The notes beneath the pieces were generated by a model. That model saw only the letters and a list, made by a program, of their open reading frames with translations, ran no database searches and was not told where the DNA came from. A program made the position numbers and the translations under genes. From Bipalium vagum (Eukaryota), in assembly GCA_037834085.1 (NCBI GenBank), contig JBBMKC010184296.1, forward strand, positions 1 through 36,933: DNA of 36,933 nucleotides, given 5' to 3'. This document shows, in pieces, positions 2,654 through 36,821 of the stretch. Each line of letters opens with the position of its first letter. Position 1 is the first letter of the stretch.

Positions 2654-5600
2654 ATGATTGAATTTACTAAATTTCTTTACGACTTTAAATATTTACTCGT
2701 TATTGTTGGAATATATTTATTTTATAAGTATTTTTTTCTTATTAATTCCTCTAAAATAATGGAAAAATTTAGATTAGGTAAAAAAGGGTTCAACCTTCAT
2801 TTGAAACTGGGTCATGAAGGTCCACCACCTTTGCCGTTTGTAGGAAATCTATTTGACTTATACCGATATGGAATGCGAGAATTTGATAGAATCTGCCTAC
2901 AGAAATATGGAAGACTTTATCCGTAATATAATATTTTATTCTAATAATATGAAAATCCAAATCTCAGGTTTTACTTTGGCAAAATTAAAGTGTCTATCGT
3001 TGCCGATGAAGAGCTTTTGAAACAGATATTAGTTAAAGAATCAAAATGCTTTACCGATAAAATGGTTGAACTTATTTATATAATTTTAAATATATAAAAA
3101 ATATTATGTTTTATTTTGATTATTTTATAAAATAAAATTAAAATGTTATTATTATAAAATCTTTTAAATATATAAAAAATTATTTTATTCTGTATTATTG
3201 TAAAATTAATTTCAATCAATTATTATCACATAAATCAATAATAATTATTATGAATTATTAATTTATTAATTATTTATTAGTTGGAAAGAGGAAAAAGTTT
3301 TTAAAATGAAATTGTAAAAATTCTGCAGGACTCGTTCTACTAAAATATCAAGATAGAACCTTTCGGTTAAAATTTTTAATAATTTATAATTATTGTCATT
3401 AGTTAATACTTATCTAAAAATGAATATTATTTTAATTATTTGCTTTATCAGACTCTAATTTTATTTGACATATGATAATTGCTCTTGAACTTTACATTTA
3501 GAGTATAAAGCTCACGAACCGGAGAATAATAACCTTTCAAAATAATTAATAAATAAATTTCGAAAAGTTTTTGGATCATGACATTCTTTCGATTACAAGA
3601 TAATTATAGATTTATGTGATCTTAGTATTATCCTTCGAAATTCATATGGTCTTTGAATTAATGCTTGATATCATTTCTGATCCTTTGTGTAGCCCCGTTA
3701 AAGCATAAATTTTATTCTTTCATTCTGCTTATAACATATATGTATCTCTGTAATCGCTGAACATATAACATTATAATATAATATATAATATTTATGATGT
3801 CAACGTATTTTGATTTCATTATTTGTTTTATTAATTTGTTAAGGATGTAGGATTTCATGGGAAAAGTACCAAGAAAATGTTGACAGTTCTAAAGGGGAAA
3901 GATTGGCAAAGAGTGAGGAGCTTAATATCACCGATCTTTACATCTGGCAAGCTAAAAAGGGTATGGAAAAGTTTAAAAAATCACTTTCAATTCATATTGG
4001 TATTTGATTTAAGACAAAATCTGATCATAACCGTTATTAACTGTCACGCTAACCTGGCTAAACTTAAAATTCATAGGTCAAAATTGAACGTAATATTTTT
4101 TTGACAAAAATAGTCGAGTAATTGAGAAAAAGGTACTTAAAAATCAATCAAAAAGTCTTTATATATCTTAACATTATTATGAGATTCTTCAACCATTTAT
4201 TTTAGGGACCGGTTAAGTCGATAAAGTGAAATTAATTTCACATTATATATTTTAGGTAGAGAACATAGTGAGAAAACATAGATCAGACATCTATTTCATT
4301 GCCTTGATACATGTGCATTGGAACATGCTCTAAAAATAGTCCATGGATCAAAGTTTAATACTACTTTATGCAGTTCTCATCTTGATATTTCCTATTGAAA
4401 CCGTTATGGCAACAAGTATTAAAAATACTCATTAAAGGCATTTTTTATTGTATGAGTATGGTCATGGCAAAAAATTTAACGAGGCCTCACGAAAGAGTCT
4501 GAAAATCTATTTATAAAGGATTCAGTTGTTGGCCAATGGAAAATGGTGTAGAAAATATAAATAGGGCAACAGAAGTCATACGTTGTCGACATTGACAAGC
4601 AAAAACAATTGATTGAAAAGAACCTAAAAACAAAGTTCTGAAGAATTAAACAATTTTCGATTGTCATGCGGAGATGATAACAACTCACTTTCATGAAATT
4701 GGGAAATCATGTAGAGCCGGAAGATGGGAACCATGTGCCATATTGGACAAACAAAAAAAGATGTGGGTTACTATGTGTAATGCAAATCTCATCAGATATG
4801 ATCGAGATTCATTTTGGAAAAGAATTGTGGCATTCAATAAAAAGTTTGTTGAATACCCTAATAATGATCATCGCAATCAAAGGTTATCAACTGAACATTA
4901 TTCTCTTGTGACCTCAAAACCAGACCTATTCACATAAAAGTTTCTATTGTCTGTTTGAGGAGATTGTTTAGGAGTCATTGGGAACTCCTTAAATGACGAA
5001 CCTGTTAAATCTGAACGTTACTGCCAACAATTAAACAGCTTATATTTGCCTCTTCAAAAAATAAGATTCAGTTTGGTTAGCAGAAAAGGGGTTATTCTTC
5101 AGCCTTATAATGCAAAACTTCATTCATTCGAAATGAAAAAAAGAGAATTTTTAGGACGTTTAGAAATGTCCACCAAGTAGCCTAGACATCGTGGCTAAAG
5201 ATTATCACTTATTCCACTCAATGAGACACTTTTTGAAATGATTTTTATGAAAACCTGGGTGATATAAGAAATGACTTGCAAACGTTTTTTGATAAGAAAA
5301 CCTGCAGAATTTTATTCCGATGGCACACATTCTTTGATAGATAGATGGCAGAGAGTAGTTGACACTGGTGGATGTTGCCTGCCAGCACAACATTTCTCAT
5401 ATTGAAGTTTTTTGAACCATATCAGACATGTTCGTATCTTTATTATATCCTTGCCTTAAACAACAAATATCTTTTCGTTTTTACTTTATTATAACAATAT
5501 AATAAAATACGGCGGACATGTTTATTTTCATTATCCATTTTGAAATGCTGCAGAAATAAAAATCTATTTTAATCGATTAAAATAAATTTAAAATTTGAGA

Positions 5601-8600: not shown

Positions 8601-11600
8601 TCATTCCAGTCCAATAATTAATGTTCAAAATTCCGTGTTTATGATTATTTTTCATGGAAATGTGATTGAAGAAAGAATGTTTAGACATGCTTACGTCTGC
8701 CATCATGACACAACTTTGTTGATGAATTAAACCTAAGCTTTTTCTCAACAATATGTTCATTATTTACGTCCTATAAGAGAATTTTCAATCAGATGAATTA
8801 GTAGGACTGTGAGGTTCCATTAGGCGCCAGATCAGCGGAAAAAATACTACCTGATTTTTTCTCTTGGGGCATCTGCAGACACGACTATATAGATGAAAAT
8901 CCAAAGATATCCAAGATCTGTAAAGTAATATTCAAATGGACGCAGAAAAAATGTGTCAAAATGTTATGAATGACTTATATAATCGCTTACATAAATGTAC
9001 TAGAGCTAAAGGTCATTCTGTGGAAAATCATTAAATATTATCGTGTCAAACATTTCCAGTCTTATGTTGAACACATTTTACGGTATTACAATTTAAAATC
9101 CCATACTTACTTTCTCCACACCCTGTATGTTTATAAATCTTAATATCTTTTCGAGTCTCGTTGCTTTGTTAAATAACTTTTTTCGAATTCCTTTTATTAT
9201 GACACAAGGTCGAGTGTTATCAAATCGCAGAATAACATCTTTCTGTTATTTAATACTTGTGTGTGTACAGTTTTCTTTAAATTTAAACTGGAAAAATGAG
9301 GACTGTAGACATTATTAATAATAATTTCACTCGTTATGAACAAGACCAAAACTAATTCACCAACATACACAAGATTGGGTTTTTTGCAGAATAAGATAGA
9401 ATTTGATAACATACATTGGGGTCTTGCACAAGTAAACAATAAACCCCTTTAGGCTTCAAAGCTGAAATTTACGAACATATAATTGAATGGGTAAATAGTC
9501 ATGTTCAAAATTACACTGCTCCCTTTTTATAACTTATAAAGTATAAAAGGTTTTATGTCTCGAGATACCAGTTTTCAACGAATTTAATTGCAAAGGTTCA
9601 CATACAAGTGAATCAAATGTTCTCATGACCATAACATGAAGATTGAAAATTATTCAATTTGTGCTCTATTTAAAATAGAACATTACCTTGTTGCAAACTT
9701 TGTATATAAAATGAATTTAGGAATATAATGACTTCATAAGTCTGATGCTGAGAGCACATGAAGAAATTGATGAAAAGAGTTCTGAACAGATCAAAGCTGC
9801 GGGTTCGAGAACATTAACAAACGAGGAAATCATGGCCCAATCTTTAATATTCTTACTAGCTGGCTATGAGACCACGTCAACCACCTTGAACTTCCTCTCT
9901 TATTTTCTGGCATTAAATCCTGATGTGCAATCGCAGATTTATGGGGAAATTTTGAACCAGATCGGAGCGGAAGTAATTTATTATAATAATTATCAATATC
10001 CACTTAAACATTGTTTTTGTTGTTACTCCATCACACTGTGATCGATTGAACTTGATATGTTTAGGGAGATATCACATACGATTCACTGATGAACATGCCA
10101 ATATTGGACGCAGCTATAAATGAAACGCTGCGATTATGTACACCGGTAGCCAGATTTGAACGAGTCTGCACTCAGGATGTGACTTTGACAACGTCTGACC
10201 ACAGGAAAATAATAGCAAAAAAGGGAGACATCTTTTCAGTGCCTGTTCATGCAATTCACACTGATCCTTCCTTGTGGCCAAACCCAGACTCTTTTAACAT
10301 AAAACGGTAAAATGTTTTTGGGTTTCACTTAAACAAAAGCCGAACATATTCAAACAAAGATCATTCATAAAGTGTTCAGAGACATTCAAACCCTTAGTGC
10401 TTATTGAATTCGATAATAATGTTCGAAGATAATTGATCAAAATACCCTTTTGGTGTTCGTAACAGTTTATTATTATAATTTTTATTTAAAAAAATGTCGA
10501 ACACTGTTTTTTTACTTAAGAGAAACAATGTTTTTTTATTACCTATCTTCTTTTTCTGACTTACAAGAAAAACCAATGTCAATAAGAACAAGAAAGACAA
10601 AATTGACAACCAGCAATTATATTTTTAGTAACAAATTCATCGTTTCTCCAAAGCTATTACGGTATTGTGACCACATAAATTCTTGAAGAAAAACAACTTT
10701 GAGGTGATTATATGCTCCATGCACAGCTTTCACCCTTTCTTTGATCTTGTTGTTTTAGCTTTTGACATTGTGGTCATAATTAACAAACTGATATTTATGA
10801 CAAACCGATTCATGTATACATGTTTTGTCTAAGTCACGATATTGTCGTGCCTCATCAGTGTTTAACTTTCTAGCTGATTTCTTTTTTTTGTTTGTTGTAA
10901 GGTTTCTGTTAATTTTTTTGATAAATGTTTTCGTTCTTACGGTTCTTGGACGTCCAGGAGAATTTCGAGCTAGTAATGATTTTTCCTCTTTTTTTTAATT
11001 TAGTCCATCCATAAATAGTAGACTTTGGTACCGTTTTTGCTACAGCTTCATAAATTCCTTCCGATTTTTTCCCATTTTCATAATGGGTTTTTATCAAATT
11101 TCTTACACAGCTCTCATACGTCATTACCTAAAAGAAAATATTGCTAAAAATAAAGTATGTTTATTTTGCAAGATATCGAAAACCTTGGCATAAATTAAAT
11201 CAATTAATAATTCAAATTTAATTTTTTTTATTTTAAAAATAATGTATTTAAAAAATTATCATTCTTTATTGGCCATATTGCACATATTGAATTCTTGTAT
11301 AAAGTTTAATTTATATATGGATTTTTCCAATGATACCAATGTGTCAAAAATGACCTATTATTTACACCTGTATCAAAAATGACCTGCCCAATACCCAATG
11401 TGTTTAATTTGGCTTACAATCTTGCCATAGGTAAAAAAACATTGTCCAAAATATCAGTATTACAGCTTTGATTCGGTGCACATAGAGTCTATATAATAGT
11501 AAACATAATTTTTCTTTTCTTCCTTAAACTATCTTCTTTTGGAAGTTGTAGATTAAGATTTGATCAACCCTTTTATCATTTATATTCAAACTTTGTGTAT

Positions 11601-25868: not shown

Positions 25869-26130
25869 TCATTCATTTTGAATATCTTCGTACGATTTGA
25901 AGTTCTGCTCAGCAATTCCATGTCTCATTAAACGGAACAGGTGAAGATTGGAAGGAGCAAGATCTGGTGAAAACGGTAGGTGAGTGAGTATTTTCCATTT
26001 CATATCTTTAAACATGCTTTTAACTGCTTTAGACGTGTGATACGTTGCGTTGTCACTTAGAAAAATTAATTTGACATGTTTATTGACCAATTCTGGACGT
26101 TTGATTATTAAAGACTGATTCAGCTGGTCT
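25869..26130 (-). mobile_element. Mariner transposase C-terminal fragment
   Basis: KRPELVNKH..IFLSDNATYH..WKILTHLPFSPDLAPSNLHLFR. Confidence 0.9.
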
Positions 26131-26488
26131 ATTTTTTTTGGTAAAAAGGGAATTGACATTCCCCATTGATAAAGCTGGTCTACGATTGATTGATCGTCTG
26201 ATCAGAATAGTATATAAGGAGATGGAATCCGCAGTGTATTGTTATAAAATTCTCAGAGAGAAATTTTCGTGACCATGAGATATTCAGGATATTCGTCAGA
26301 AGAAGGCTGCAAGATACTCGACCACGAGACATTCGAATACGAAATATTCGATATATTCATCAAAATGTTTTCCGTCATTCTTTATGCCCTCTATGCGACA
26401 GGAGCTCACGACGGGTCCTGTGCTGTTAGGGGGTTTCTGAGCGGACCGGATTGGCCTCAGCAAACCACCCTTTAAACCTATCGTCACA
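26131..26488 (+). mobile_element. Partial LTR-like sequence
   Basis: AATAGTATATAAG TATA box identical to that of the solo LTR, GC-rich hairpins, and an end ..GTCACA followed by AG-TGG. No 5' TG end or TSD found. Confidence 0.4.
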
Positions 26489-27265: not shown

Positions 27266-29420
27266 ATGACTAATGAGGTAATTATGTATTCATGGTAAAA
27301 TTTCATTTGCTTTTATTTCAGTTAGCAGATGCAGAATTAGTTTTGCAAGGTTTAAACATTAAAATATTTAAAAATAAATTATAATCATTATTTAGATAAT
27401 GATGATTTAGATAACATTATTGGTGCTCCACCTGAGGATTTATCCGATGAAGAAATAGTTAACAAAGATATTAAAAATGTTCCTTATAAAAAACTCTCAG
27501 AAAAAAACTCTGCAGGAAGATTGCGTACTAAATAATTTTTGTTCTATTTAATTTATAATTACGTCAATTTTTAGAAATGAGAGTACCAGATGCTCCAGAT
27601 AATTTGATTGAATTGGTTTATCAGAAAAAATGTGTTGATTGTAGTGCCATTCTAACCACAATATGTAGTGCATTAATGCATTACAATAGCGTTAAACATC
27701 AAAATAAAATTGCATTAAAATTTTTGCCACACGGGACTTATAATTTGCCTTTGTCAAAGGAAGAAATACGGGAAATTGAAACAGGTTCCGCCAAAGCAAG
27801 TGAAACAAAAGCTTCTAAAGTACCTTTCAAAGAAATTGTAAAGGTATGAACGTGCGATTGTATAAATTTAATTCTAAAGATTTTTATAATTCTCATTGCT
27901 AAAAGAAGATTTAAAGAAAAATAATATTTTTAAAGTACCCTTTCATCATATTCTTAATCGTATATCAGATTCAAAATGTTTACATGAACCATTATTTGTT
28001 AAAAATTAATTTTGTAAAGTGTTTTAATTGATTTTTAAATTTCATAAAACGTTGATTTTTTTAAATAAATTTATAATTGATATTATTTTTTTGTCAATTA
28101 TTTATTGATAGTTAAAATACAATCATTAACATGAGGTGTGTATTATAATTAAATAAGATTTTCGGATATAGATTTTGAATAATTTTAAGATAATTAATTT
28201 TATTATTATATAAGTAATCCAATTGATATTTAAAACAACCTTTTCTTTAGTTAATTAATCATATTATTAGTACTTGTTAGGAAAGTATTTTTTTATAATC
28301 ATGTTATTAACTAATATCTTTTTAAAATTTTGTTGACATTTTGACTCTTTTAGACCTATATATTAATAAGTGATCAAATATTCTGTTTTTTAAAAAAATA
28401 AAATCATTTGTAAAACTTATGACTAGTTTAAATAGTATTACGACACAAAGTAAAAACTCGAGGAAAGTCACATTTGAGCTTGGTCACAAAGCCTAAAATT
28501 GATGTAAATTTTATTGTTAATTTGGTATTTTTTGTTGATAGAAATATGAAATAGAGGAAGACGTTCGAAAATTGGATTTGCAATTTTGTCGATTGTGTGA
28601 AACACCGTTTTCGTCAAAGGTCGCTGCACTTCAACATTATTCAGGAAAGAAACACAAGAAAAAAGCTGAAAACTGGTCACCCTTCAATCCCGTGCAAGCA
28701 ATCGATACCAAAGACGATCAGAAATGCGACGTTTGTAACGTGATATGTGAATCGGTCATGCACATGGAATCACATCTGGCCGGTCGAAAACACAAAATCA
28801 AAATGAAAGCATATCTGGAACGAATGAACGCCGGTGTTTTTGCACCGCCGATGTCGTCGCGAGGGTTTTGTGATTTTAACAATGTCGAGCGTGAAGAAAT
28901 GAATCCCATTGATCCATCAAGCTTTGTAGTGGAAAAAATTCTTCCAAAGAATTTGGGAGGATCATTTTTGGATAAATTTGAATCGGTGGACGGATTGAGA
29001 AGTTATGCAGCAGGAAGACCGGAAGAAGTAGAAGAAGAGGAGAGATTGAGGGAAGAAAACAATCGTTTCGGGGTTAGGGGTTATTGTGACAGATTTGAGA
29101 ATCCTCACTCTGACATGATGAGACGAGATCATAGATCGATATTTGATGATTACCATGAAGACATTAAGCCTATAGTGCCACCCCCGGTGTCGTCGTTTAC
29201 CCCAAACATGTATTCCCCGGACTTCCAGAGGAGATCATTCAATGAAGTCGCCGATTATGATTATCACGGTACCAATTCTTTGCGCAGACACGGATCATTG
29301 CATGACCCAGAATTCAATTCTCCTTATGCACCAAGATTCACTAATAAAGTTCCATTCAGAAATTCAGTGAAAAGTTTTGGGCCAACAAAATTTAGATATA
29401 ATTCTCATGGACAATTGTAA
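27266..29420 (+). CDS. Matrin/U1-type C2H2 zinc-finger RNA-binding protein (ZMAT3/ZNF385/ZNF346-like), isoform A, 438 aa
   Basis: Exons 27266-27277, 27322-27349, 27396-27524, 27575-27843, 28542-29420; GT-AG and in phase. Three C-x2-C-x12-H-x5-H fingers (CVDC..HYNSVKH, CRLC..HYSGKKH, CDVC..HLAGRKH). The first two micro-exons are less certain. Confidence 0.85.
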
Positions 29421-29967
29421 AATCAATATTTTTCGTTATCGGTTTAACTAATTTGTGTGTTATTAGTAATATAGGTTTTAAACGACGTTTTTATTTTCGG
29501 AAGAATAGATTTTTAAATATTGTTTATTGTTATTAAGGAGTTTGCAGTTTTAAGTGTTCATGACCACAAAAAGAATAGGTTTAAATTAATTGTTCCGGTG
29601 TTTTAAGATGATTCACAGTGATTAGAAAATGTTATCATTGTGAAAAAACTTTTTTGTTTAGTAATAATGTTTGTATATTAATTAAATATGTAGTAATCAG
29701 TTTAAGAATGGTATTCTCTTAATTATTGATCGGTTTTTAAAGAACAATAATATTGAGAAAGAATCTTGTTTTCATTATTAATAAGCGTTATATTTAATTG
29801 ATTTGAAAAAACAATTTCTGAATTTAAAATTGATTTTACAATCTAGAAACACTTGAAAATCTATATTTAAAATTGAGTTTTTGTTTTTTATTGCAACTCA
29901 TTTTTATTTGAATAATTTTTAAAATATTTAATATTTAACGTAGTTTTTGAAAAATTGAGCTAACTTG

Positions 29968-31077
29968 CACCCTTGTGCAAATTAATTGAAACATGGTATG
30001 TTATACATAAAATTTCATATACAAAAACAGTAATAACTATGACCTCTATTTCTAAGCAATATTTGAATATGTTTTAGCATTGAGTTTTGAAAAGTCACTG
30101 ATGATTTTCGGATCCCTACACCAAGCTAGAGTCATTACCGAAATAAGCTTTTTCATTGTCATACAGTCCATAGAATTCCAGTTTGCATATGGGCCATAAA
30201 TTTTCGATCGGATTAAAGTCCGGAGTGTTCCCGGACTGATATGCTTTTCTGTCATAAAATTCTTGAATTTTTCGATGTGTGACAGAGTAAGGTCATCTTG
30301 AAAGGTCCTAGAACCACCAGGAGTCCTCTACAGCTCAGGAAAACTCGTTTTTCTAAGATTTTCAATTTTCTGTTGGTGCTAGACATACAAAACTATGTGG
30401 AAGTTGCAAAAATTCTCTGTAGGTAACATACGAATATGCAAAAAAATATACGTATACAAAAAAATCGCTTTTGTCGCTGAAAAGGAATTTTCTTTTGCCA
30501 AATTCTTTTACTTTTTTGGCCAGTGATACCATTTTACTTTCATTGGTTTGGTTAAAATCTCTTCACAGGTCTACTAGGTTTACGATCAGCTCCGATAAGG
30601 CGTCTGCGAACTTTAGAGGAACTAATTTCAGTTCCTTTCTCCTCTAAATCCATTTTCAAATCATCACTCAATTTGTGGGTATCTTTTTTACTTTGTCGCA
30701 TTAAGGACGATCATTTATTAATGTAATTTTCTTCTTATGACCATACTTTCTTTTGCGTTTTGGAAAAAGCTATTCTGTATCCTATTTGTGATGACACGAC
30801 TGAAAGTTGATAATCTCTATTTCTTTTCTATATATTCTTCTTGTGATTCATATTTGTCACATCCATCTGGAACAACAGTTGACTTTCAACTAATTTACGC
30901 TTTATTCATGATATAATGTTTCCAAGATTTAAAATACCTGGTCAATAAATCATTAAGCTAATCCATTAGTCATAATACAAAACCTGTTATGTATATATTT
31001 CATAATGGCATGGTTTGCTACAGGAAATAGAATTTTTATTGATAAAAATTCTGTTTCACTTAATTTGCAAAAAAAAT
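29968..31077 (-). mobile_element. Tc1 DNA transposon, decayed
   Basis: TIR cores TGCAAATTAATTGAAACA / TGTTTCACTTAATTTGCA; relics KVRRRLI, FSDKSDF, FQDDL and PGNTPDFNPIENLW. Confidence 0.88.
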
Positions 31078-32899
31078 AATTTTAGGTTTAAATAAATGTA
31101 TTTGTAGATCAATTTATGCTCTTTTAAGAAATTACTTTATTGAAAACTTTAAATTTTTTATTGATTTCTAAACGTTTTCTCTTAATTTCAGTTAAAATCT
31201 GATTAAATTATACTTAGATAAAGCTTTTAATGCTAAATATTTTTTCATGTGTAAAATTAAAAAAAATTGAAATTACAAAATATTTATATTCTTAAATTGT
31301 TTCGATAAAAATAATTTAATTAAAAATTTCAGAATATATACTTATTATGGTTTTATTTTAATAAATCAATTTGTGCCATAGCAGTAAGTATTTATTTAAA
31401 ATTTTGGTGACAAAATTATTATTATCAAAAAATTTAAATTTTAACTAGATCAGTTTCTTATTAAACGGTTGAAATATTGTTACTTATTGTCAGTTAAAAA
31501 TGCTATAGTATTTATTATTGACAGATCACTAAGTTATTGGTTAATATTTCAGTAGGTTTAATTCCAGTATTATTTAATTTTGTTTAACTGTACTATTAAG
31601 TCGGTTTTATTTTGACGTGTAATGTTGAAAATTGCAATTGTATTGCTTTTCATTTTGCATAATGCTTTGATTGTCAGCCTGTAATAAGTTTAAAAATTAA
31701 AATTATTCATTAAAAGTGGAAACGAAAAATAAGATCTGGTTAACCAAACTGACCATCGATTGGATTGATCTTCAAATCTAAAAATGTATACACCTTAAAG
31801 TGGAACGAACATTAACTAGGAATGGTAGTCTCAGTCTGAAAAATGAATAAAACGCTTTAAATGAAAGTGTATAAAACACTGAATATGTCGTATTCAATTT
31901 TTTTATTAGTCCAGTTATTACAGAAAGTTGATAATTGACAGGCATATGTAGAGTTTGAGGAATTTTTCAATCGAATTGACAATGAATCAAATCTTACTGT
32001 GTTTGTTATGGTTTTTGTATATGCTAATTGATCAGTAAAAAAACATCCAGTGCAAAAATTATTTAGATATTTAAAAGATTTTTGGTCGGGTTTTAGCAAT
32101 TTATCACTGTTCAAGCCTGTTTAATTTATGTAAATTTTCTTTTTACTCCTGTACCTTGTTCCCTATAGTTTGACAACGGTAAATTTTCTCTACGGACCTG
32201 ATTGAAAGAAGATAACTATTGATTTTCCTCTTAGGTTATCATATCATCATAGAATTTTTAGATTTATATTAAACTAGTTTATGTATAACAGTTTTATTCA
32301 TTGTTAGCTTTAAAGCGAAGAATTGTAATACTTAATTTTTGTGAAAAATAAAACATGTATGTTCTTGCTAGTTCGTATCATTGCTAGAAACTAAAGATGA
32401 TCATTTTGAAAATAAATAAATGTTATATTTGTCTCTTTTCATATAAATAATATTATATCAAAGTTCTTTTGAGTATAAAATTGCAGAATTATATAATTAT
32501 GGGTTATTTGTTTTAAAAGAATTTATTTTTATTGAAATTAGTGATGATAAATAATATAACATATCTTTTGTTTCATTAACATCATTTCTAAAAGGATATG
32601 TCCAATTTTCGTACTCTTCTTGTCAGAGAATAATCTTTAAAACGGATACTTGCATGGAAAAAAGTGTAAATGACAATATTATTTATAAAATTTTCAGACT
32701 ATTTAAATGATTACCTTAACTTAAACGCAATATTTAAAACATGAGCACCGAAAAAATGTGTGAGTTGAAACTTCACGTAGAGAAATACAGATACTTGGAA
32801 GATTAACTTCAATCTGGGTAGCTTTTGTTACCAATAATAACATAGTTTATTGCCTTGTTAGTAAAGAATTTCACGAGTATGAGTGTTGAGATTTATTTT

Positions 32900-33430
32900 T
32901 AAATTTACAAAATTTAAAAACCTTGGATGCTATTTCGGAAATGAAATGCTGAAATGAGGAAATTGGATAGTATTGGTATCGTCATTTCTCTTATGCAATA
33001 AAATAAGGTTTTTGAATTGTGAATGTATTCAATGATGAAGTGTGAATTATTGAACAAATTGCAGTTGTTCTTGAAAAAATTTAATGAAACTCCAGAGCTA
33101 GATACAAAGAATACAAACAAAAGATACATCCAATGAAAATGTTTGTGTATTTGTTGAGAATTCAGGTTAATTATTCATTATGAACATATCAAAAGCAGTA
33201 ATAAGTTAATAAGAGAGAAATAATGTAAGCAGATCATTAGATTGGATTCATTTATACTTCTAAAACTCCGACTTTGATTAATATAAAAGAATAAATAGCC
33301 ACTGTGACAATATCCGGAATGATCAGGCTATTAAATTGCCAAAGCTCTTTTTCAATATGAAATTGAAAAGGTTGTAGATCGATGGAAATCAATTTGTTGA
33401 GAGAAGTGAAGGATATGTAGCTAATTAATA
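32900..33430 (+). mobile_element. Highly degraded mariner-like fragment
   Basis: C-terminal FQYEIEKVVDRWK..EGYV resembles mariner GI.KL..RW..G.Y; upstream WYRHF. Boundaries approximate. Confidence 0.5.
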
Positions 33431-33600
33431 ATTTTTTTATTGAAGTTATCTTTTATATTTTTTCCTTTATAAAATCAAGTTTGGACTTTTATAATGATTC
33501 AATACATAAGTGCAATTGCAAAATATGACTTTGTTAACTTAAAAAATTCATTATGTAAAATTGAATATTCGATGTCATTTGAAGTTATTATTTGTAATAG

Positions 33601-34398
33601 AAATTTGAAATAAAAGAGAACGTGCGAAAATTGAATCTTGAATTTTGTCGACTTTGTGAAATTCCATTTTCGTCTAAAGTTGTAGCATTGCAACATTATT
33701 CGGGGAAGAAGCACAAAAACCAAGCTGAAAACTGGTCTATCTATAATCCAAACAAGCCTGTCGACACTAAAGACAAGTTGAAATGTGACGTGTGCAACAT
33801 TGTTGTTGAGTCTTTTATGCACATGGAGGCTCACTTGTCTGGGAAAAAACATCAATTGAAAATGAAGATCTATCTTGATAGGATTAATGCATGTTCAATC
33901 GCACCGCCCATGTCTTCTCGAGGTTTTTGTGATTTCAACAATGTGGAACGCGAAGAAGCAAATCCTGTTGATCCTTCTAGATATCTTCCAAATCCACCTG
34001 TTATGCCACAAAAAGCTACTCGATCATTTATAGGTCGTTTTGAGCAGAATGATCGTCAGCGATATCCAGACAAATTCATTGAGCCTGATTATGGATTTTC
34101 TAGAAATATGAATTTTGGATATATATCGGAATTTCATGAAGATTATAAACCAACCAGTTCTTTCAATTATACCAATTACTTTCCACCTGATATTAGTAGG
34201 CGATTCAATAGTATGTCGGGCGACACACCTTTGCAATTAAATAATACAGCGTTCAATCCTCATAGAAATGATTCTTTAAGTCGCTCTCAATTGAACTCTC
34301 CATATGCTTCATACTTTGTGGATAAAGTTGCAACAAGATTCCCTGTTCAGAGTTTTGGACCGACTAAATTTAGATATAACAGGAAACAGCTATTATAA
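33601..34398 (+). CDS. Duplicated terminal exon of the zinc-finger gene (putative isoform B, 411 aa if spliced to the 27843 donor)
   Basis: Acceptor TTTGTAATAG at 33591-33600, phase 0, begins KFEIKENVRK (copy A: KYEIEEDVRK). Two intact fingers, open for 265 aa, AATAAA at 34406. Confidence 0.8.
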   Translation, partial: KFEIKENVRKLNLEFCRLCEIPFSSKVVALQHYSGKKHKNQAENWSIYNPNKPVDTKDKLKCDVCNIVVESFMHMEAHLSGKKHQLKMKIYLDRINACSIAPPMSSRGFCDFNNVEREEANPVDPSRYLPNPPVMPQKATRSFIGRFEQNDRQRYPDKFIEPDYGFSRNMNFGYISEFHEDYKPTSSFNYTNYFPPDISRRFNSMSGDTPLQLNNTAFNPHRNDSLSRSQLNSPYASYFVDKVATRFPVQSFGPTKFRYNRKQLL

Positions 34399-36149
34399 AT
34401 ATTTCAATAAAATCGTTCAATATTTTGTGTATGTTCTTAAAATTACATTTACTTAAAATTGTTATTTTTTTTATTCTGAAAAAAATTTTTTTTTCATTAA
34501 TAATTTTTGCATGGTAGGGTAATGTATTAACAAAAAATAAAAATATAAAATATATTTTTATTTATAAATATAATTTTCTTAATAAGTGATCTTTAATTAA
34601 ATAATTTTAGAAAATGTTTGTACTGAAAAGATAACATATATCTTCTGCATAGTTAGTTTCATTTTTTGTCAAAATCCAAAAGAATAATTAAAATAAATTT
34701 ATAAAATATGATTTCAACGATCTCGGAAATTTAGAAAACATTATTTAATTGTTACCATCTAGTAAAGTTTTGATAAAATAAGTCTGATAGGTGTTAAAAG
34801 CTTTCAATGTTGAAACATTTTAATGAAAAATATATTCCAACAAGGTTATAAAAGTATAATAATTCCAAGTGGTTCTTGAACAGCTTGATTGCTTTTTAAA
34901 GCTTCTGGATTTTGCTAAAGATGGTTGAAAAATTGACTGTTAAATTATCATTAAAGAAGAATGATATTGAAACGGTTATACACTTGCAAATTTTTCGTAA
35001 GTTTTTCACCACGTTTTTTATTAACACCATTTATAATAATATCCATATATAATAATAAAAGAATATCTCATCTATTCAGTTCAAGCATATATTCATTCTG
35101 CAGACACTGATAATAATATCAAAGGAATAACACTGAATTTCTTTTAAAAATAGGTAATACTAAGAAGTTTATTAAACAAATAACATTTTTGTAAATTATT
35201 TTGAACTTGATGATTCGGTAAACCCTCGAGAGACAGTGTCGAATACTAAAAATGTGGCCGTTCAATTAGGAGTATTTTATTTGTAAACCCAATATTGTAG
35301 AAAAATGTAATCTTTTAGTACTATTATTAGCCTTTATTACTTCCTTTAGGTTCGTTAATACTTTTAGAACTATTTTCAAATATTATTTATTTTTATATTT
35401 ATTTGAGATTATTTATTAAAAATTTCACACAAATATATTTCAACCATTTCAGTTAATAATAAAAATACATACAGATCAAAATGAAACTGATCTTAATAAA
35501 TAATTAGGAGTTAATAAAATTGAAACTTATCAATTGAATGAATGAAAAACAGAAAGAGTACTAACCGCAGAATCTTATAAACTTATTTTATAAAAAATTA
35601 GAGCAGAGCTTTTGCAAGCTAGAATTGGGTTCACCTAAACTAGATCAGAATTCAGATAATAAAGGATCATTTGTTGAGAACAATAAAAGAAATGAAAAAA
35701 ATGAATTGAAATTGAGTGCAAATAAGAAAATACCCAAAACAATATTGTAAGGAAATATTTTAAGAATTAAATAAAGGAGAATTTTTTATTTAAATAATTA
35801 TATAAATTAGAATAATATATAGTACAAAAAGGTTCACGAGACAATTTTAATTTTTCTTATTTTAAAACGTCAACAAAATTAATAAATAACACCTCAAGAA
35901 AGAACAGACAAATTATTATGTGTACAACTATGACTCCGGTTTTTTTAAAAGGATAATAAAAAATTGTTTGAATATAATAATTATATTGAATTGATTTATA
36001 AACAAAAAAATCATATATTTAATAATATCACGAGACAGTTGTTTGAATATTCCTTGTTTAAATTTATAGTGATTCAAAATGTCATATGATCTATTCTATC
36101 TTTTCATATGATCTATTACTAATTTTTAAAATCTTTTCAAACACTAACT

Positions 36150-36512
36150 AGTGAACTTTATCGATCACAATTAATTCGTTTGAAGCAAGCTTTGAATGAA
36201 AAACGACCGGAATACGTGGCTAGACACGAAAAGATAATTTTACAACATGATAACGCAAGACCACACGTTAATTCAGTTGTAAATAATTACTTAGAAGGTA
36301 CAAAGTGGGAAGTCTTACCTCACCCGTTCTATTCACCAGACACCTCTCCTTCGGATTACCATTTGTTCCGCTCTATGCAATCAGCACTTTTCAGAGAGCG
36401 GTTCAGTTCCTTTGAAGATCTTCAAAATTGGATTGACAGCTGTATTTCATCAAAAGAGCCAGAGTTTTTCTTTCATGCAATTCATTCGTTACCTGAAAGG
36501 TGTGTGAAGACT
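36150..36512 (+). mobile_element. Mariner (DD34D, Mos1-like) transposase C-terminal half
   Basis: YRSQLIRLKQAL.EKRPE..RHEKIILQHDNARPH..WEVLPHPFYSPDTSPSDYHLFRSM; 34 residues between the second and third catalytic D. Confidence 0.93.
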
Positions 36513-36821
36513 TCCAGGCCCTGTTCCAAATTTAGTCTCAAATTCTCGACAAAATAACAATAAATGACAATATAGTAATTATTCTGAAAACATTATAGTG
36601 TTTTAGTGTTTTTTGTTCTTTTATATATTTGTTTTTGTGTTATTTTCAAATATAATTTTTTTATGTAGAGTTAAAATCCGGAGTTTAATTAATTTTTCTT
36701 CCTATCTGTTTAAAATATAAAATTATAGTAAAATAATATATAAAATATAAAAATTTATTATAATTATGATTAATTTTGATGATTAATTTATTAAATATTT
36801 GGAAAAAATGTTTAGTTACTA

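What the first reader, a model, noticed from the sequence alone, without database searches (positions are those of the whole stretch)
27266..34411. Zinc-finger RNA-binding gene with two swappable, tandemly duplicated terminal exons
Seen: exons 1-4 end at one phase-0 donor (27843). Two homologous large last exons (28542-29420 and 33601-34398) start at the same codon position after good acceptors, and both are fully open. They share about 73% aa identity over the first 126 residues (manual count) and have divergent low-complexity tails. No copy of exons 1-4 is visible between them, only Tc1/mariner relics. The distal exon has AATAAA 8 nt after its stop; the proximal one has no AATAAA within about 550 nt (only ATTAAA at 29681). 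Inference: one gene makes two proteins sharing finger 1 but exchanging fingers 2-3 and the tail through alternative last-exon/polyadenylation choice, possibly a tissue, stage or sex switch. An ORF caller would wrongly split this into two genes.
Basis: partly seen in the sequence, partly recalled or inferred. Interest (0 to 1): 0.75.

Follow-up and report, generated by a model that had tools for sequence, protein, structure and literature searches.

The report
Zinc-finger gene with duplicated last exon
A gene for a three-finger, probably double-stranded-RNA-binding protein is followed by two old, well-preserved copies of its large last exon, so it probably makes two protein versions, but no RNA data could be reached to show that both are used.

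Summary
Exon 4 ends at a phase-0 donor (27843). Two homologous open exons (28542-29420, 33601-34398) start at the same codon behind AG acceptors, and 92 of their first 126 residues are identical. Each encodes two zf-met/JAZ-type fingers.

Both copies are old and under purifying selection. Synonymous sites are saturated, and identity by codon position is 0.75/0.90/0.50. Neither exon has a usable ATG, and an in-frame TAG forms each acceptor, so both must be entered by splicing.

No copy of exon 3 or 4 lies in the spacer. It holds one Tc1-like element and single-copy DNA. A public 309-aa relative aligns colinearly with exon 4 and then with the start of either copy.

Alternative last-exon use is the best reading (about 0.55), but it is unproven.

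Rivals are a spliced leader donating an AUG to the distal exon, an unseen 5' exon, and a silent relic.

The two versions differ mainly in the tail, not the fingers. The scan has noted other duplicated alternative exons in this genome on other DNA, but not this locus.

The parts
27266..27277 (+). Coding exon 1 (ATG + 3 codons), donor gtaatt
   Evidence: Sequence. Phases computed. The paralog on C201076 has the equivalent ATG-GCA-GAG|gt.
27322..27349 (+). Exon 2, 28 nt, ends in phase 1
   Evidence: A 28-nt exon with the same phase and similar residues is readable in the paralog (read by eye).
27396..27524 (+). Exon 3, 129 nt, acidic segment (..APPEDLSDEEI..)
   Evidence: the paralog's exon 3 is also 129 nt and its peptide is clearly homologous.
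27575..27843 (+). Exon 4: divergent first finger (C-x2-C-x12-H-x5-H by eye) and linker. It ends at the single phase-0 donor AAG|gtatga.
   Evidence: It is 85% identical to C201076:924-1220. It aligns with P0039 residues 29-95, E 3e-15. It has no Pfam finger hit.
28542..29420 (+). Proximal last exon 5a: fingers 2 and 3, a 166-residue tail with an acidic insert, and the stop codon
   Evidence: (zf-met E 3.2e-13, 2 stretches).
29681..29686 (+). ATTAAA, the nearest polyadenylation-type hexamer after 5a (+261)
   Evidence: This is only a motif match; function is not shown.
29962..31073 (-). Degenerate Tc1-like transposon inside the spacer or long intron, with terminal inverted repeats about 29973-29993 and 31052-31072
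   Evidence: 47 further genome matches at 67-82% identity. Inverted 21-nt match. Weak Pfam HTH_Tnp_Tc3_2 and DDE_3 hits.
33601..34398 (+). Distal last exon 5b: fingers 2 and 3, a 139-residue tail, and the stop codon
   Evidence: (zf-met E 6.7e-13, 2 stretches).
34406..34411 (+). AATAAA 8 nt after the 5b stop
   Evidence: This is only a motif match. The hexamer is common in this DNA (3.5 per kb on the + strand).

Best explanation
This is one gene for a three-finger, JAZ/ZNF346-like (probably double-stranded-RNA-binding) zinc-finger protein, and its large last exon was duplicated in tandem long ago.

The primary transcript starts before 27266. After exon 4, the donor at 27843 is joined either to the near acceptor (28541) or to the far acceptor (33600).
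- Near acceptor: a 698-nt intron is removed, and the result is a 438-residue protein ending in 5a.
- Far acceptor: a 5757-nt intron is removed, containing 5a and a Tc1-like element, and the result is a 411-residue protein ending in 5b.

The two proteins share the first 146 residues, including finger 1. Their fingers 2-3 are very similar, their tails differ strongly, and they share a C-terminal motif.

Shown here: the anatomy, the homology, the selection on both copies, and that each exon depends on an upstream exon. Inferred: that the distal junction is actually made, and that the choice is a competition between splicing to 5b and 3'-end formation after 5a.
For: - There is a single phase-0 donor, and two acceptors lie at the homologous codon.
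- An in-frame TAG forms each acceptor, and the first in-frame Met is only at about residue 73, inside finger 3, so neither exon can be read without an upstream exon.
- Both copies are selected. pS is 0.80 (saturated) against pN 0.16 in the finger part, and identity by codon position is 0.75/0.90/0.50. A 265-codon frame stayed open in only 125 of 20000 simulations at 0.1 substitutions per site, and in 0 of 20000 at 0.3.
- All zinc ligands are intact in 5b, and Pfam zf-met is above its cut-off in both exons.
- 5b is no more decayed than 5a. It scores higher against the outside relatives P0001 (286 against 253 bits) and P0003 (250 against 167 bits), and its terminal branch is shorter (0.59 against 0.87).
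- No exon-3 or exon-4 copy lies in the spacer. No Pfam domain, Rfam family or tRNA was found there.
- The public protein P0039 aligns with exon 4 at residues 29-95 and with the start of 5a and 5b at residues 117-231, so exon 4 joined directly to such an exon is the family's normal protein. A distant paralog, C87999, has fingers 1 and 2 in one exon.
- The genome holds 4 copies of the last exon (5a, 5b, X, Y) but only 2 close copies of exon 4. This fits two last exons per gene.
Against: - No RNA evidence of any kind was obtained.
- The far intron (5757 nt) is much longer than the other introns of the gene (44-698 nt).
- The polyadenylation-signal contrast is within chance.
- The 4:2 copy ratio comes from a very fragmented assembly of 272,664 contigs. 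Copy Y is a 232-nt contig without context.
- The paralog's contig shows no second exon within 1380 nt after X.
- The family tree is an unresolved star, so the age and order of the duplications are unknown.
- A short new 5' exon in the roughly 2.5 kb of single-copy spacer cannot be excluded by sequence alone.
Confidence: 0.55

Rival explanations
1. The distal exon is expressed on its own. A spliced leader that ends in AUG is trans-spliced onto the acceptor at 33600. Because the exon starts in phase 0, that AUG opens the frame, and a 266-residue two-finger protein without finger 1 is made. This could happen instead of, or in addition to, cis-splicing from exon 4.
For: - The acceptor is in phase 0 and the exon has no start codon of its own.
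- Passages of PMC12582326 state that all reported flatworm spliced leaders carry a 3'-terminal ATG that can provide a start codon, and that internal acceptor sites are used.
- Earlier notes of this scan call the genome flatworm or planarian and raise leader-donated AUGs for other genes. These are unchecked AI notes.
Against: - I did not verify the organism's identity or find its spliced leader.
- Phase 0 has a one-in-three prior and is inherited from the parent exon.
- The homologous acceptor of the paralog X very probably receives exon 4 in cis.
- The family's normal protein has three fingers.
- The 4.2-kb distance, with a transposon in it, is long for an operon-type arrangement.
Confidence: 0.12
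2. The distal exon belongs to a separate transcription unit. That unit would have its own promoter and one or more short, new 5' coding exons hidden in the single-copy spacer (31074-33600) that are unrelated to exons 1-4.
For: - About 2.5 kb of single-copy DNA with slightly raised G+C (0.25-0.31) lies before 5b.
- Short ATG-containing exons with a phase-0 donor cannot be recognised or excluded in such AT-rich sequence.
Against: - No + strand open stretch of 35 codons or more in 31074-33600 gives a Pfam hit. Both of the two tested had none.
- There is no homology to exons 3 or 4.
- Such a protein would lack the conserved finger 1 and linker that the family keeps.
Confidence: 0.13
3. The distal exon is a silent relic of a tandem duplication, left over from a whole-gene or exon duplicate. 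It is no longer spliced into any mRNA, or was silenced only recently.
For: - There is no expression evidence.
- Its G+C (0.36, third positions 0.30) is the lowest of the full-length copies.
- It lies far from the donor.
Against: - The 265 codons are open in DNA where about 1 codon in 12 would be a stop by composition (my arithmetic from 26% G+C).
- Second codon positions are 90% conserved and third positions 50%.
- The ligands are intact and the C-terminal motif is kept.
- It is closer to outside relatives than 5a is.
- Only a very recent silencing would escape these tests. At 0.05 substitutions per site, 1483 of 20000 simulated copies stay open.
Confidence: 0.08
4. The tandem arrangement is an assembly artefact that joins two paralogous loci.
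For: The assembly is very fragmented (272,664 contigs), and I could not lay reads on it.
Against: - The contig is continuous between the two exons. The window's only N letters (204) lie where the frames listed read X, about 23.5-23.8 kb.
- The spacer outside the transposon is single copy.
- The one run found holds all of the stretch's sampled words (share 1.00), though it may be the source sample.
Confidence: 0.02

Closest known systems
ZNF346 (JAZ), Xenopus ZFa and related multi-finger zf-met double-stranded-RNA-binding proteins
   Same: - The fingers are U1/matrin-type C2H2, separated by long linkers. Pfam zf-met and zf-C2H2_jaz are above cut-off in both last exons.
- The nearest solved chains are ZNF346 (2mkd, E 2.3e-4) and ZFa (1zu1, E 2.9e-4).
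- The Atlas's nearest clusters for the relative P0039 are named ZNF346 (score 0.95).
   Different: - Similarity is confined to single fingers.
- This protein has three fingers with its own conserved linker and C-terminal motifs (..PPMSSRGFCDFNNVEREE....NSPYA..FGPTKFRY).
- Those motifs were found in only 2 of the 150 best of 1256 profile hits in 1.84 billion representatives.
- Orthology to ZNF346 is not shown. RNA binding is inferred from the family name only.
Drosophila lola (with fruitless, broad and mod(mdg4), which I recall from memory): constant 5' exons joined to alternative 3' exons that each encode zinc fingers
   Same: The logic matches: a constant N-terminal part plus alternative C-terminal exons that each carry their own finger pair and stop codon. 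[quoted passage not shown]
   Different: - There is no BTB domain here.
- The fingers are RNA-binding type, not DNA-binding type.
- There are only two alternatives, and their fingers are nearly the same, so the variable part is mostly the tail.
- Use of the alternatives is not shown here.
Flatworm spliced-leader trans-splicing with a leader-donated AUG
   Same: The exon is in phase 0, lacks an ATG and sits behind a good acceptor. This is the configuration in which a leader's terminal AUG could start translation (PMC12582326 passages). Cheng et al. 2006 was seen only as a cited reference in that paper.
   Different: The acceptor is homologous to an ordinary internal cis-splice acceptor of the same gene family. 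I saw no leader, no junction and no proof of the organism's identity.

Membership tests
zf-met / JAZ-type zinc-finger proteins (Pfam PF12874, PF12171) | C-x2-C-x12-H-x5-H U1/matrin-type fingers that score above Pfam's gathering cut-off | tested here: met
   5a scores zf-met 50 bits (cut-off 21.2) and zf-C2H2_jaz 33.3 (22.6). 5b scores 48.9 and 34.9. Each has two stretches. Exon 4's finger is not detected by Pfam; it is recognised by pattern and only.
zf-met / JAZ-type zinc-finger proteins (Pfam PF12874, PF12171) | Several fingers separated by long linkers in one polypeptide | tested here: met
   Fingers 2 and 3 lie about 45 residues apart within each last exon. The relatives P0039 and C87999 carry fingers 1-3 in one protein.
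zf-met / JAZ-type zinc-finger proteins (Pfam PF12874, PF12171) | Binding of double-stranded RNA | not testable with these tools
   Inferred from the family description only.
ZNF346 orthologue | Full-length similarity to ZNF346 beyond single fingers | tested here: not met
   The PDB match covers residues 14-42 only, E 2.3e-4. Profile hits other than P0002 and P0003 match finger positions only.
Gene with alternative last exons that arose by tandem exon duplication | Two homologous terminal exons in tandem on one strand, each with its own stop codon, behind one shared in-phase donor | tested here: met
Gene with alternative last exons that arose by tandem exon duplication | Both copies kept by purifying selection | tested here: met
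   (pN 0.16 against pS 0.80; codon-position identities 0.75/0.90/0.50; decay simulation).
Gene with alternative last exons that arose by tandem exon duplication | A 3'-end (polyadenylation) signal of its own after each terminal exon | tested here: inconclusive
   AATAAA lies at +8 after 5b. Only ATTAAA, at +261, follows 5a. Both are within chance in this AT-rich DNA.
Gene with alternative last exons that arose by tandem exon duplication | Both splice junctions observed in RNA | not testable with these tools
lola-type BTB-zinc-finger locus | Constant N-terminal BTB domain | tested here: not met
   Exon 4 has no BTB hit. Exons 1-3 are too short to hold one.
Spliced-leader-dependent gene with leader-donated AUG | The first coding exon starts at a phase-0 acceptor and lacks its own ATG | tested here: met
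   The same holds for 5a and X, which are ordinary internal exons, so the feature does not discriminate.
Spliced-leader-dependent gene with leader-donated AUG | The organism has spliced leaders ending in AUG, and leader-exon junctions are seen | not tested
   The organism is called a flatworm only in earlier unchecked notes. A leader sequence would have had to be typed from a paper, so I left that step out.

The most novel reading that the evidence does not exclude
In this flatworm-type genome the duplicated last exon has a double life. It is both an alternative last exon of the three-finger gene and, through a spliced leader that donates its AUG to the phase-0 acceptor, a stand-alone gene for a two-finger protein. 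The whole small family (two genes, four last exons) may be built this way. That would make tandem duplication of a terminal exon, combined with leader-donated start codons, a route by which an exon becomes a gene.
Probability: 0.08. Interest if true: 0.65.

Novelty: new member of a known kind. Interest (0 to 1): 0.3.

Why it matters
If both junctions are made, this is a clean, small example of protein diversification by tandem duplication of a terminal exon in an RNA-binding zinc-finger protein. The fingers are held nearly constant, the disordered tail is exchanged, and a short C-terminal motif is kept. That pattern points to different partners or localisation rather than different RNA targets.

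It also matters for annotation. ORF-based callers already list such exons as separate small proteins: P0001-P0003 in public collections are exon-sized fragments. In a flatworm it would additionally be a test case for telling cis-spliced alternative exons from leader-started genes.

In itself the mechanism is a known kind, and nothing here is shown at the RNA level.

Tried and rejected

Wider relatives.
- The word search found only 3 exon-sized fragments with 5a, and the same 3 with 5b.
- The profile search of 1.84 billion representatives gave 1256 hits. Among the 150 listed, only P0002 and P0003 extend beyond the fingers, and P0039 is a distant full-length relative.
- The metagenome scan gave 577 pattern matches and no relative.

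Timing of the duplications. The tree of 7 rows had 0 of 4 inner branches supported. For P0002 I had cut off the N-terminal 55 residues because they look out of register.

dN/dS as a ratio. It could not be computed because pS is at or above 0.75 in all pairs.

Walking from the 232-nt contig of copy Y. No overlapping contig was found.

Polyadenylation-signal argument. Rejected as evidence.

Other contents of the spacer. One Rfam hit far below its threshold, lying inside exon 5a and not in the spacer (RMST_3, 24.5 against 55 bits, E 0.38). There was no Rfam hit in 32542-35500 and no tRNA. Five of 5 spacer ORFs had no Pfam family.

Full report
WHAT IS THERE

The window is AT-rich animal DNA with 18-33% G+C per kb. 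On the + strand, four short exons can be read with consistent phases: 27266-27277, 27322-27349, 27396-27524 and 27575-27843. They sum to 438 nt, or 146 codons, and end at the donor AAG|gtatga in phase 0.

This 5' model is not guesswork. A paralogous contig of the same genome (C201076, read on its reverse strand) has the same layout (exons 1 and 2 compared by eye):
- a start exon ATG..GAG|gt;
- a 28-nt second exon;
- a 129-nt third exon with a clearly homologous peptide;
- a fourth exon 85% identical in protein that ends in GTGAAG|gtaatc.

Two large open exons follow exon 4. The first is 5a, at 28542-29420, with 292 codons. The second is 5b, at 33601-34398, with 265 codons. In each case the acceptor is the AG of an in-frame TAG, so the frame cannot be extended upstream. 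The first in-frame Met lies only at about residue 73, inside a finger.

The two exons are homologous over their whole length (BLASTP E 1e-90, 48% identity). At the DNA level, detectable homology covers 28526-28921 against 33586-33980 at 73%. It reaches only 16 nt into the intron.

WHAT THE PROTEIN IS

Each last exon carries two zf-met / zf-C2H2_jaz fingers above Pfam's cut-offs. The nearest solved chains are ZNF346/JAZ and Xenopus ZFa, but the match covers single fingers only (E about 2e-4).

Exon 4 has a C-x2-C-x12-H-x5-H pattern that Pfam does not score.

A 309-residue public protein, P0039, was found by the profile search. It aligns with exon 4 at its residues 29-95 (E 3e-15). It aligns with the first 113-120 residues of 5b and 5a at its residues 117-231 (E 2e-21 and 2e-20).

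The 19 exon-4 residues left after the aligned part fill the gap. Exon 4 joined directly to the start of such an exon therefore reproduces the family's normal three-finger protein.

The window genome's own copy of that distant relative (C87999) even has fingers 1 and 2 in one exon. The Atlas places P0039 next to clusters named ZNF346 (score 0.95). This is a lead, not proof of orthology.

The family proper is recognised by the linker motif after finger 3 and by a C-terminal motif. It is very small in public data. It has three exon-sized ORF fragments, P0001-P0003. Only P0002 and P0003 extend beyond the fingers among the 150 hits listed, out of 1256 hits in 1.84 billion representatives.

ARE BOTH COPIES ALIVE?

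All pairs among the four copies in this genome (5a, 5b, X on C215209, Y on C163773) are saturated at synonymous sites (pS 0.76-1.06). Non-synonymous differences in the finger part are 0.10-0.20.

Between 5a and 5b, identity by codon position is 0.75/0.90/0.50.

A simulated neutral 5b keeps its frame open in the following fractions, with indels ignored:
- 1483 of 20000 trials at 0.05 substitutions per site;
- 125 of 20000 at 0.1;
- 3 of 20000 at 0.2;
- 0 of 20000 at 0.3.

5b keeps all eight zinc ligands and the C-terminal motif. It scores higher than 5a against the outside relatives P0001 and P0003, and its terminal branch is shorter than 5a's (0.59 against 0.87).

So 5b has been kept as coding sequence for most of its history and is not the more decayed copy. 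A very recent silencing cannot be excluded.

WHAT LIES BETWEEN

The 4180-nt spacer holds one old Tc1-like element, at about 29962-31073 on the minus strand. Its terminal inverted repeats give a 21-nt match. It has 47 further genome matches at 67-82% identity, and its Pfam hits to the Tc3 HTH and DDE_3 domains are weak.

The rest of the spacer is single copy. No copy of exon 4 is in the window, and no copy of exon 3 is in the spacer. No spacer ORF tested has a Pfam family (5 of 5 blank). No tRNA and no Rfam family was found in the spacer. The one weak Rfam hit, far below its threshold, lies inside exon 5a.

A short part of the spacer, which read laying named as not layable, was left out of everything after that call.

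HOW IT MOST LIKELY WORKS

5b is selected, and it cannot start translation. It begins at the acceptor homologous to the one that normally receives exon 4. The only in-phase donor found upstream is 27843. The simplest route to expression is therefore cis-splicing 27843>33601, which skips 5a.

That gives two proteins, of 438 and 411 residues, with a common first 146 residues. I give this reading about 0.55.

What differs between them is mainly the tail. The fingers differ little (pN 0.16). The tails differ strongly (pN 0.44), and 5a has an acidic insert. The last roughly 30 residues are again conserved.

The poly(A)-signal contrast is real as a count but not beyond chance: 1.78 AATAAA were expected after 5a and none were seen, while the hexamer occurs 3.5 times per kb in the window.

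One supporting hint is copy number. The genome holds four last-exon copies but only two close exon-4 copies. The paralog (C201076, then an (AAT)n run, then C215209) looks like a simple gene of exons 1-4 plus X. Copy Y is unplaced and is closest to X (82%).

That hint is weak. The assembly has 272,664 contigs, Y is a 232-nt contig with no overlapping neighbour, and the adjacency of the two paralog contigs is inferred only from their shared microsatellite ends.

RIVALS

(a) Earlier notes of this scan call the genome flatworm or planarian and raise leader-donated start codons for other genes. These are AI notes and I did not verify them. Passages of PMC12582326 say that all reported flatworm spliced leaders end in ATG and that internal acceptors are used. 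A leader on the phase-0 acceptor at 33600 would make 5b a stand-alone two-finger gene. I give this 0.12. It does not exclude cis-splicing.

(b) An unseen new 5' exon and promoter lie in the single-copy spacer (0.13).

(c) 5b is a silent relic (0.08).

(d) The arrangement is an assembly artefact (0.02).

COMPARISON WITH WHAT IS KNOWN

By domain, the protein is a JAZ/ZNF346-like zf-met protein. Orthology to ZNF346 was tested and not met, because the similarity is confined to single fingers.

The gene logic resembles lola: constant 5' exons plus alternative 3' exons, each with its own fingers and stop codon (10.1101/132027; I saw the listing, the abstract start and passages). It also resembles fruitless, broad and mod(mdg4), which I recall from memory and did not check in any call. 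There is no BTB domain here, the fingers are of the RNA-binding type, and there are only two alternatives.

My paper searches for 'alternative last exons' + 'tandem duplication' + 'zinc finger' found 0 papers. The search for 'alternative last exon' + 'exon duplication' + 'polyadenylation' found 2, neither about such a gene judging by title and abstract start. These searches do not show that the arrangement is unpublished.

The scan has recorded several other duplicated alternative exons in this same genome on other DNA, so the kind of feature seems common in this animal.

VERDICT

It is a new member of a known kind, of modest interest.

Noticed in passing
L010 (G000:C201076, reverse strand) and L006 (G000:C215209:91-1275): This is a paralogous gene. 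Exons 1-4 lie on one contig and a 394-codon last exon (X) on another, and both contigs break in an (AAT)n run, so they are probably adjacent. X is much richer in G+C than the window's copies (0.54, third positions 0.60, against 0.36-0.41 and 0.30-0.38). It also has a long Gly-rich insert in its tail.
   Followed up: partly
L004 (G000:C163773:1-232, reverse strand): A fourth copy of the last exon (Y) sits on a 232-nt contig. It spans 77 codons, is open, and is 82% identical to X. No overlapping contig was found, so its place in the genome is unknown.
   Followed up: partly
P0002 (public ORF fragment, 276 aa): This outside relative has letters other than Cys and His at the ligand positions of finger 2, and its tail lacks the C-terminal motif. 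It may be a decayed or frame-shifted copy in another organism.
   Followed up: no
L018 (G000:C87999:3451-6624), minus strand, ORFs 1916-2497 and 1270-1653: This is a distant three-finger paralog, 72% identical to the public protein P0039, with fingers 1 and 2 in one exon. The intron that separates exon 4 from the last exon in the window's gene is therefore absent here.
   Followed up: partly
window 29962-31073: This is a Tc1-like element with 21-nt terminal inverted repeats. The search found 47 further matches to this part of the spacer in the genome, at 67-82% identity, so it is an old dispersed family.
   Followed up: partly
window 25869-26159 (-) and 36180-36557 (+): Mariner/Tc1-type DDE_3 transposase remnants flank the gene on both sides (E about 4e-5, below Pfam's cut-off).
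   Followed up: partly
window about 23450-24070: The window has 204 N letters, and the frames listed here read a run of X. The DNA around it is a short-period low-complexity repeat that gives long artificial ORFs on both strands.
   Followed up: no
window 2654-2926 and 9745-10041 (+): These open stretches look like cytochrome P450 exons (..PFVGN.. and ..AGYETTS.. motifs). I recognise them from memory; they were not tested.
   Followed up: no
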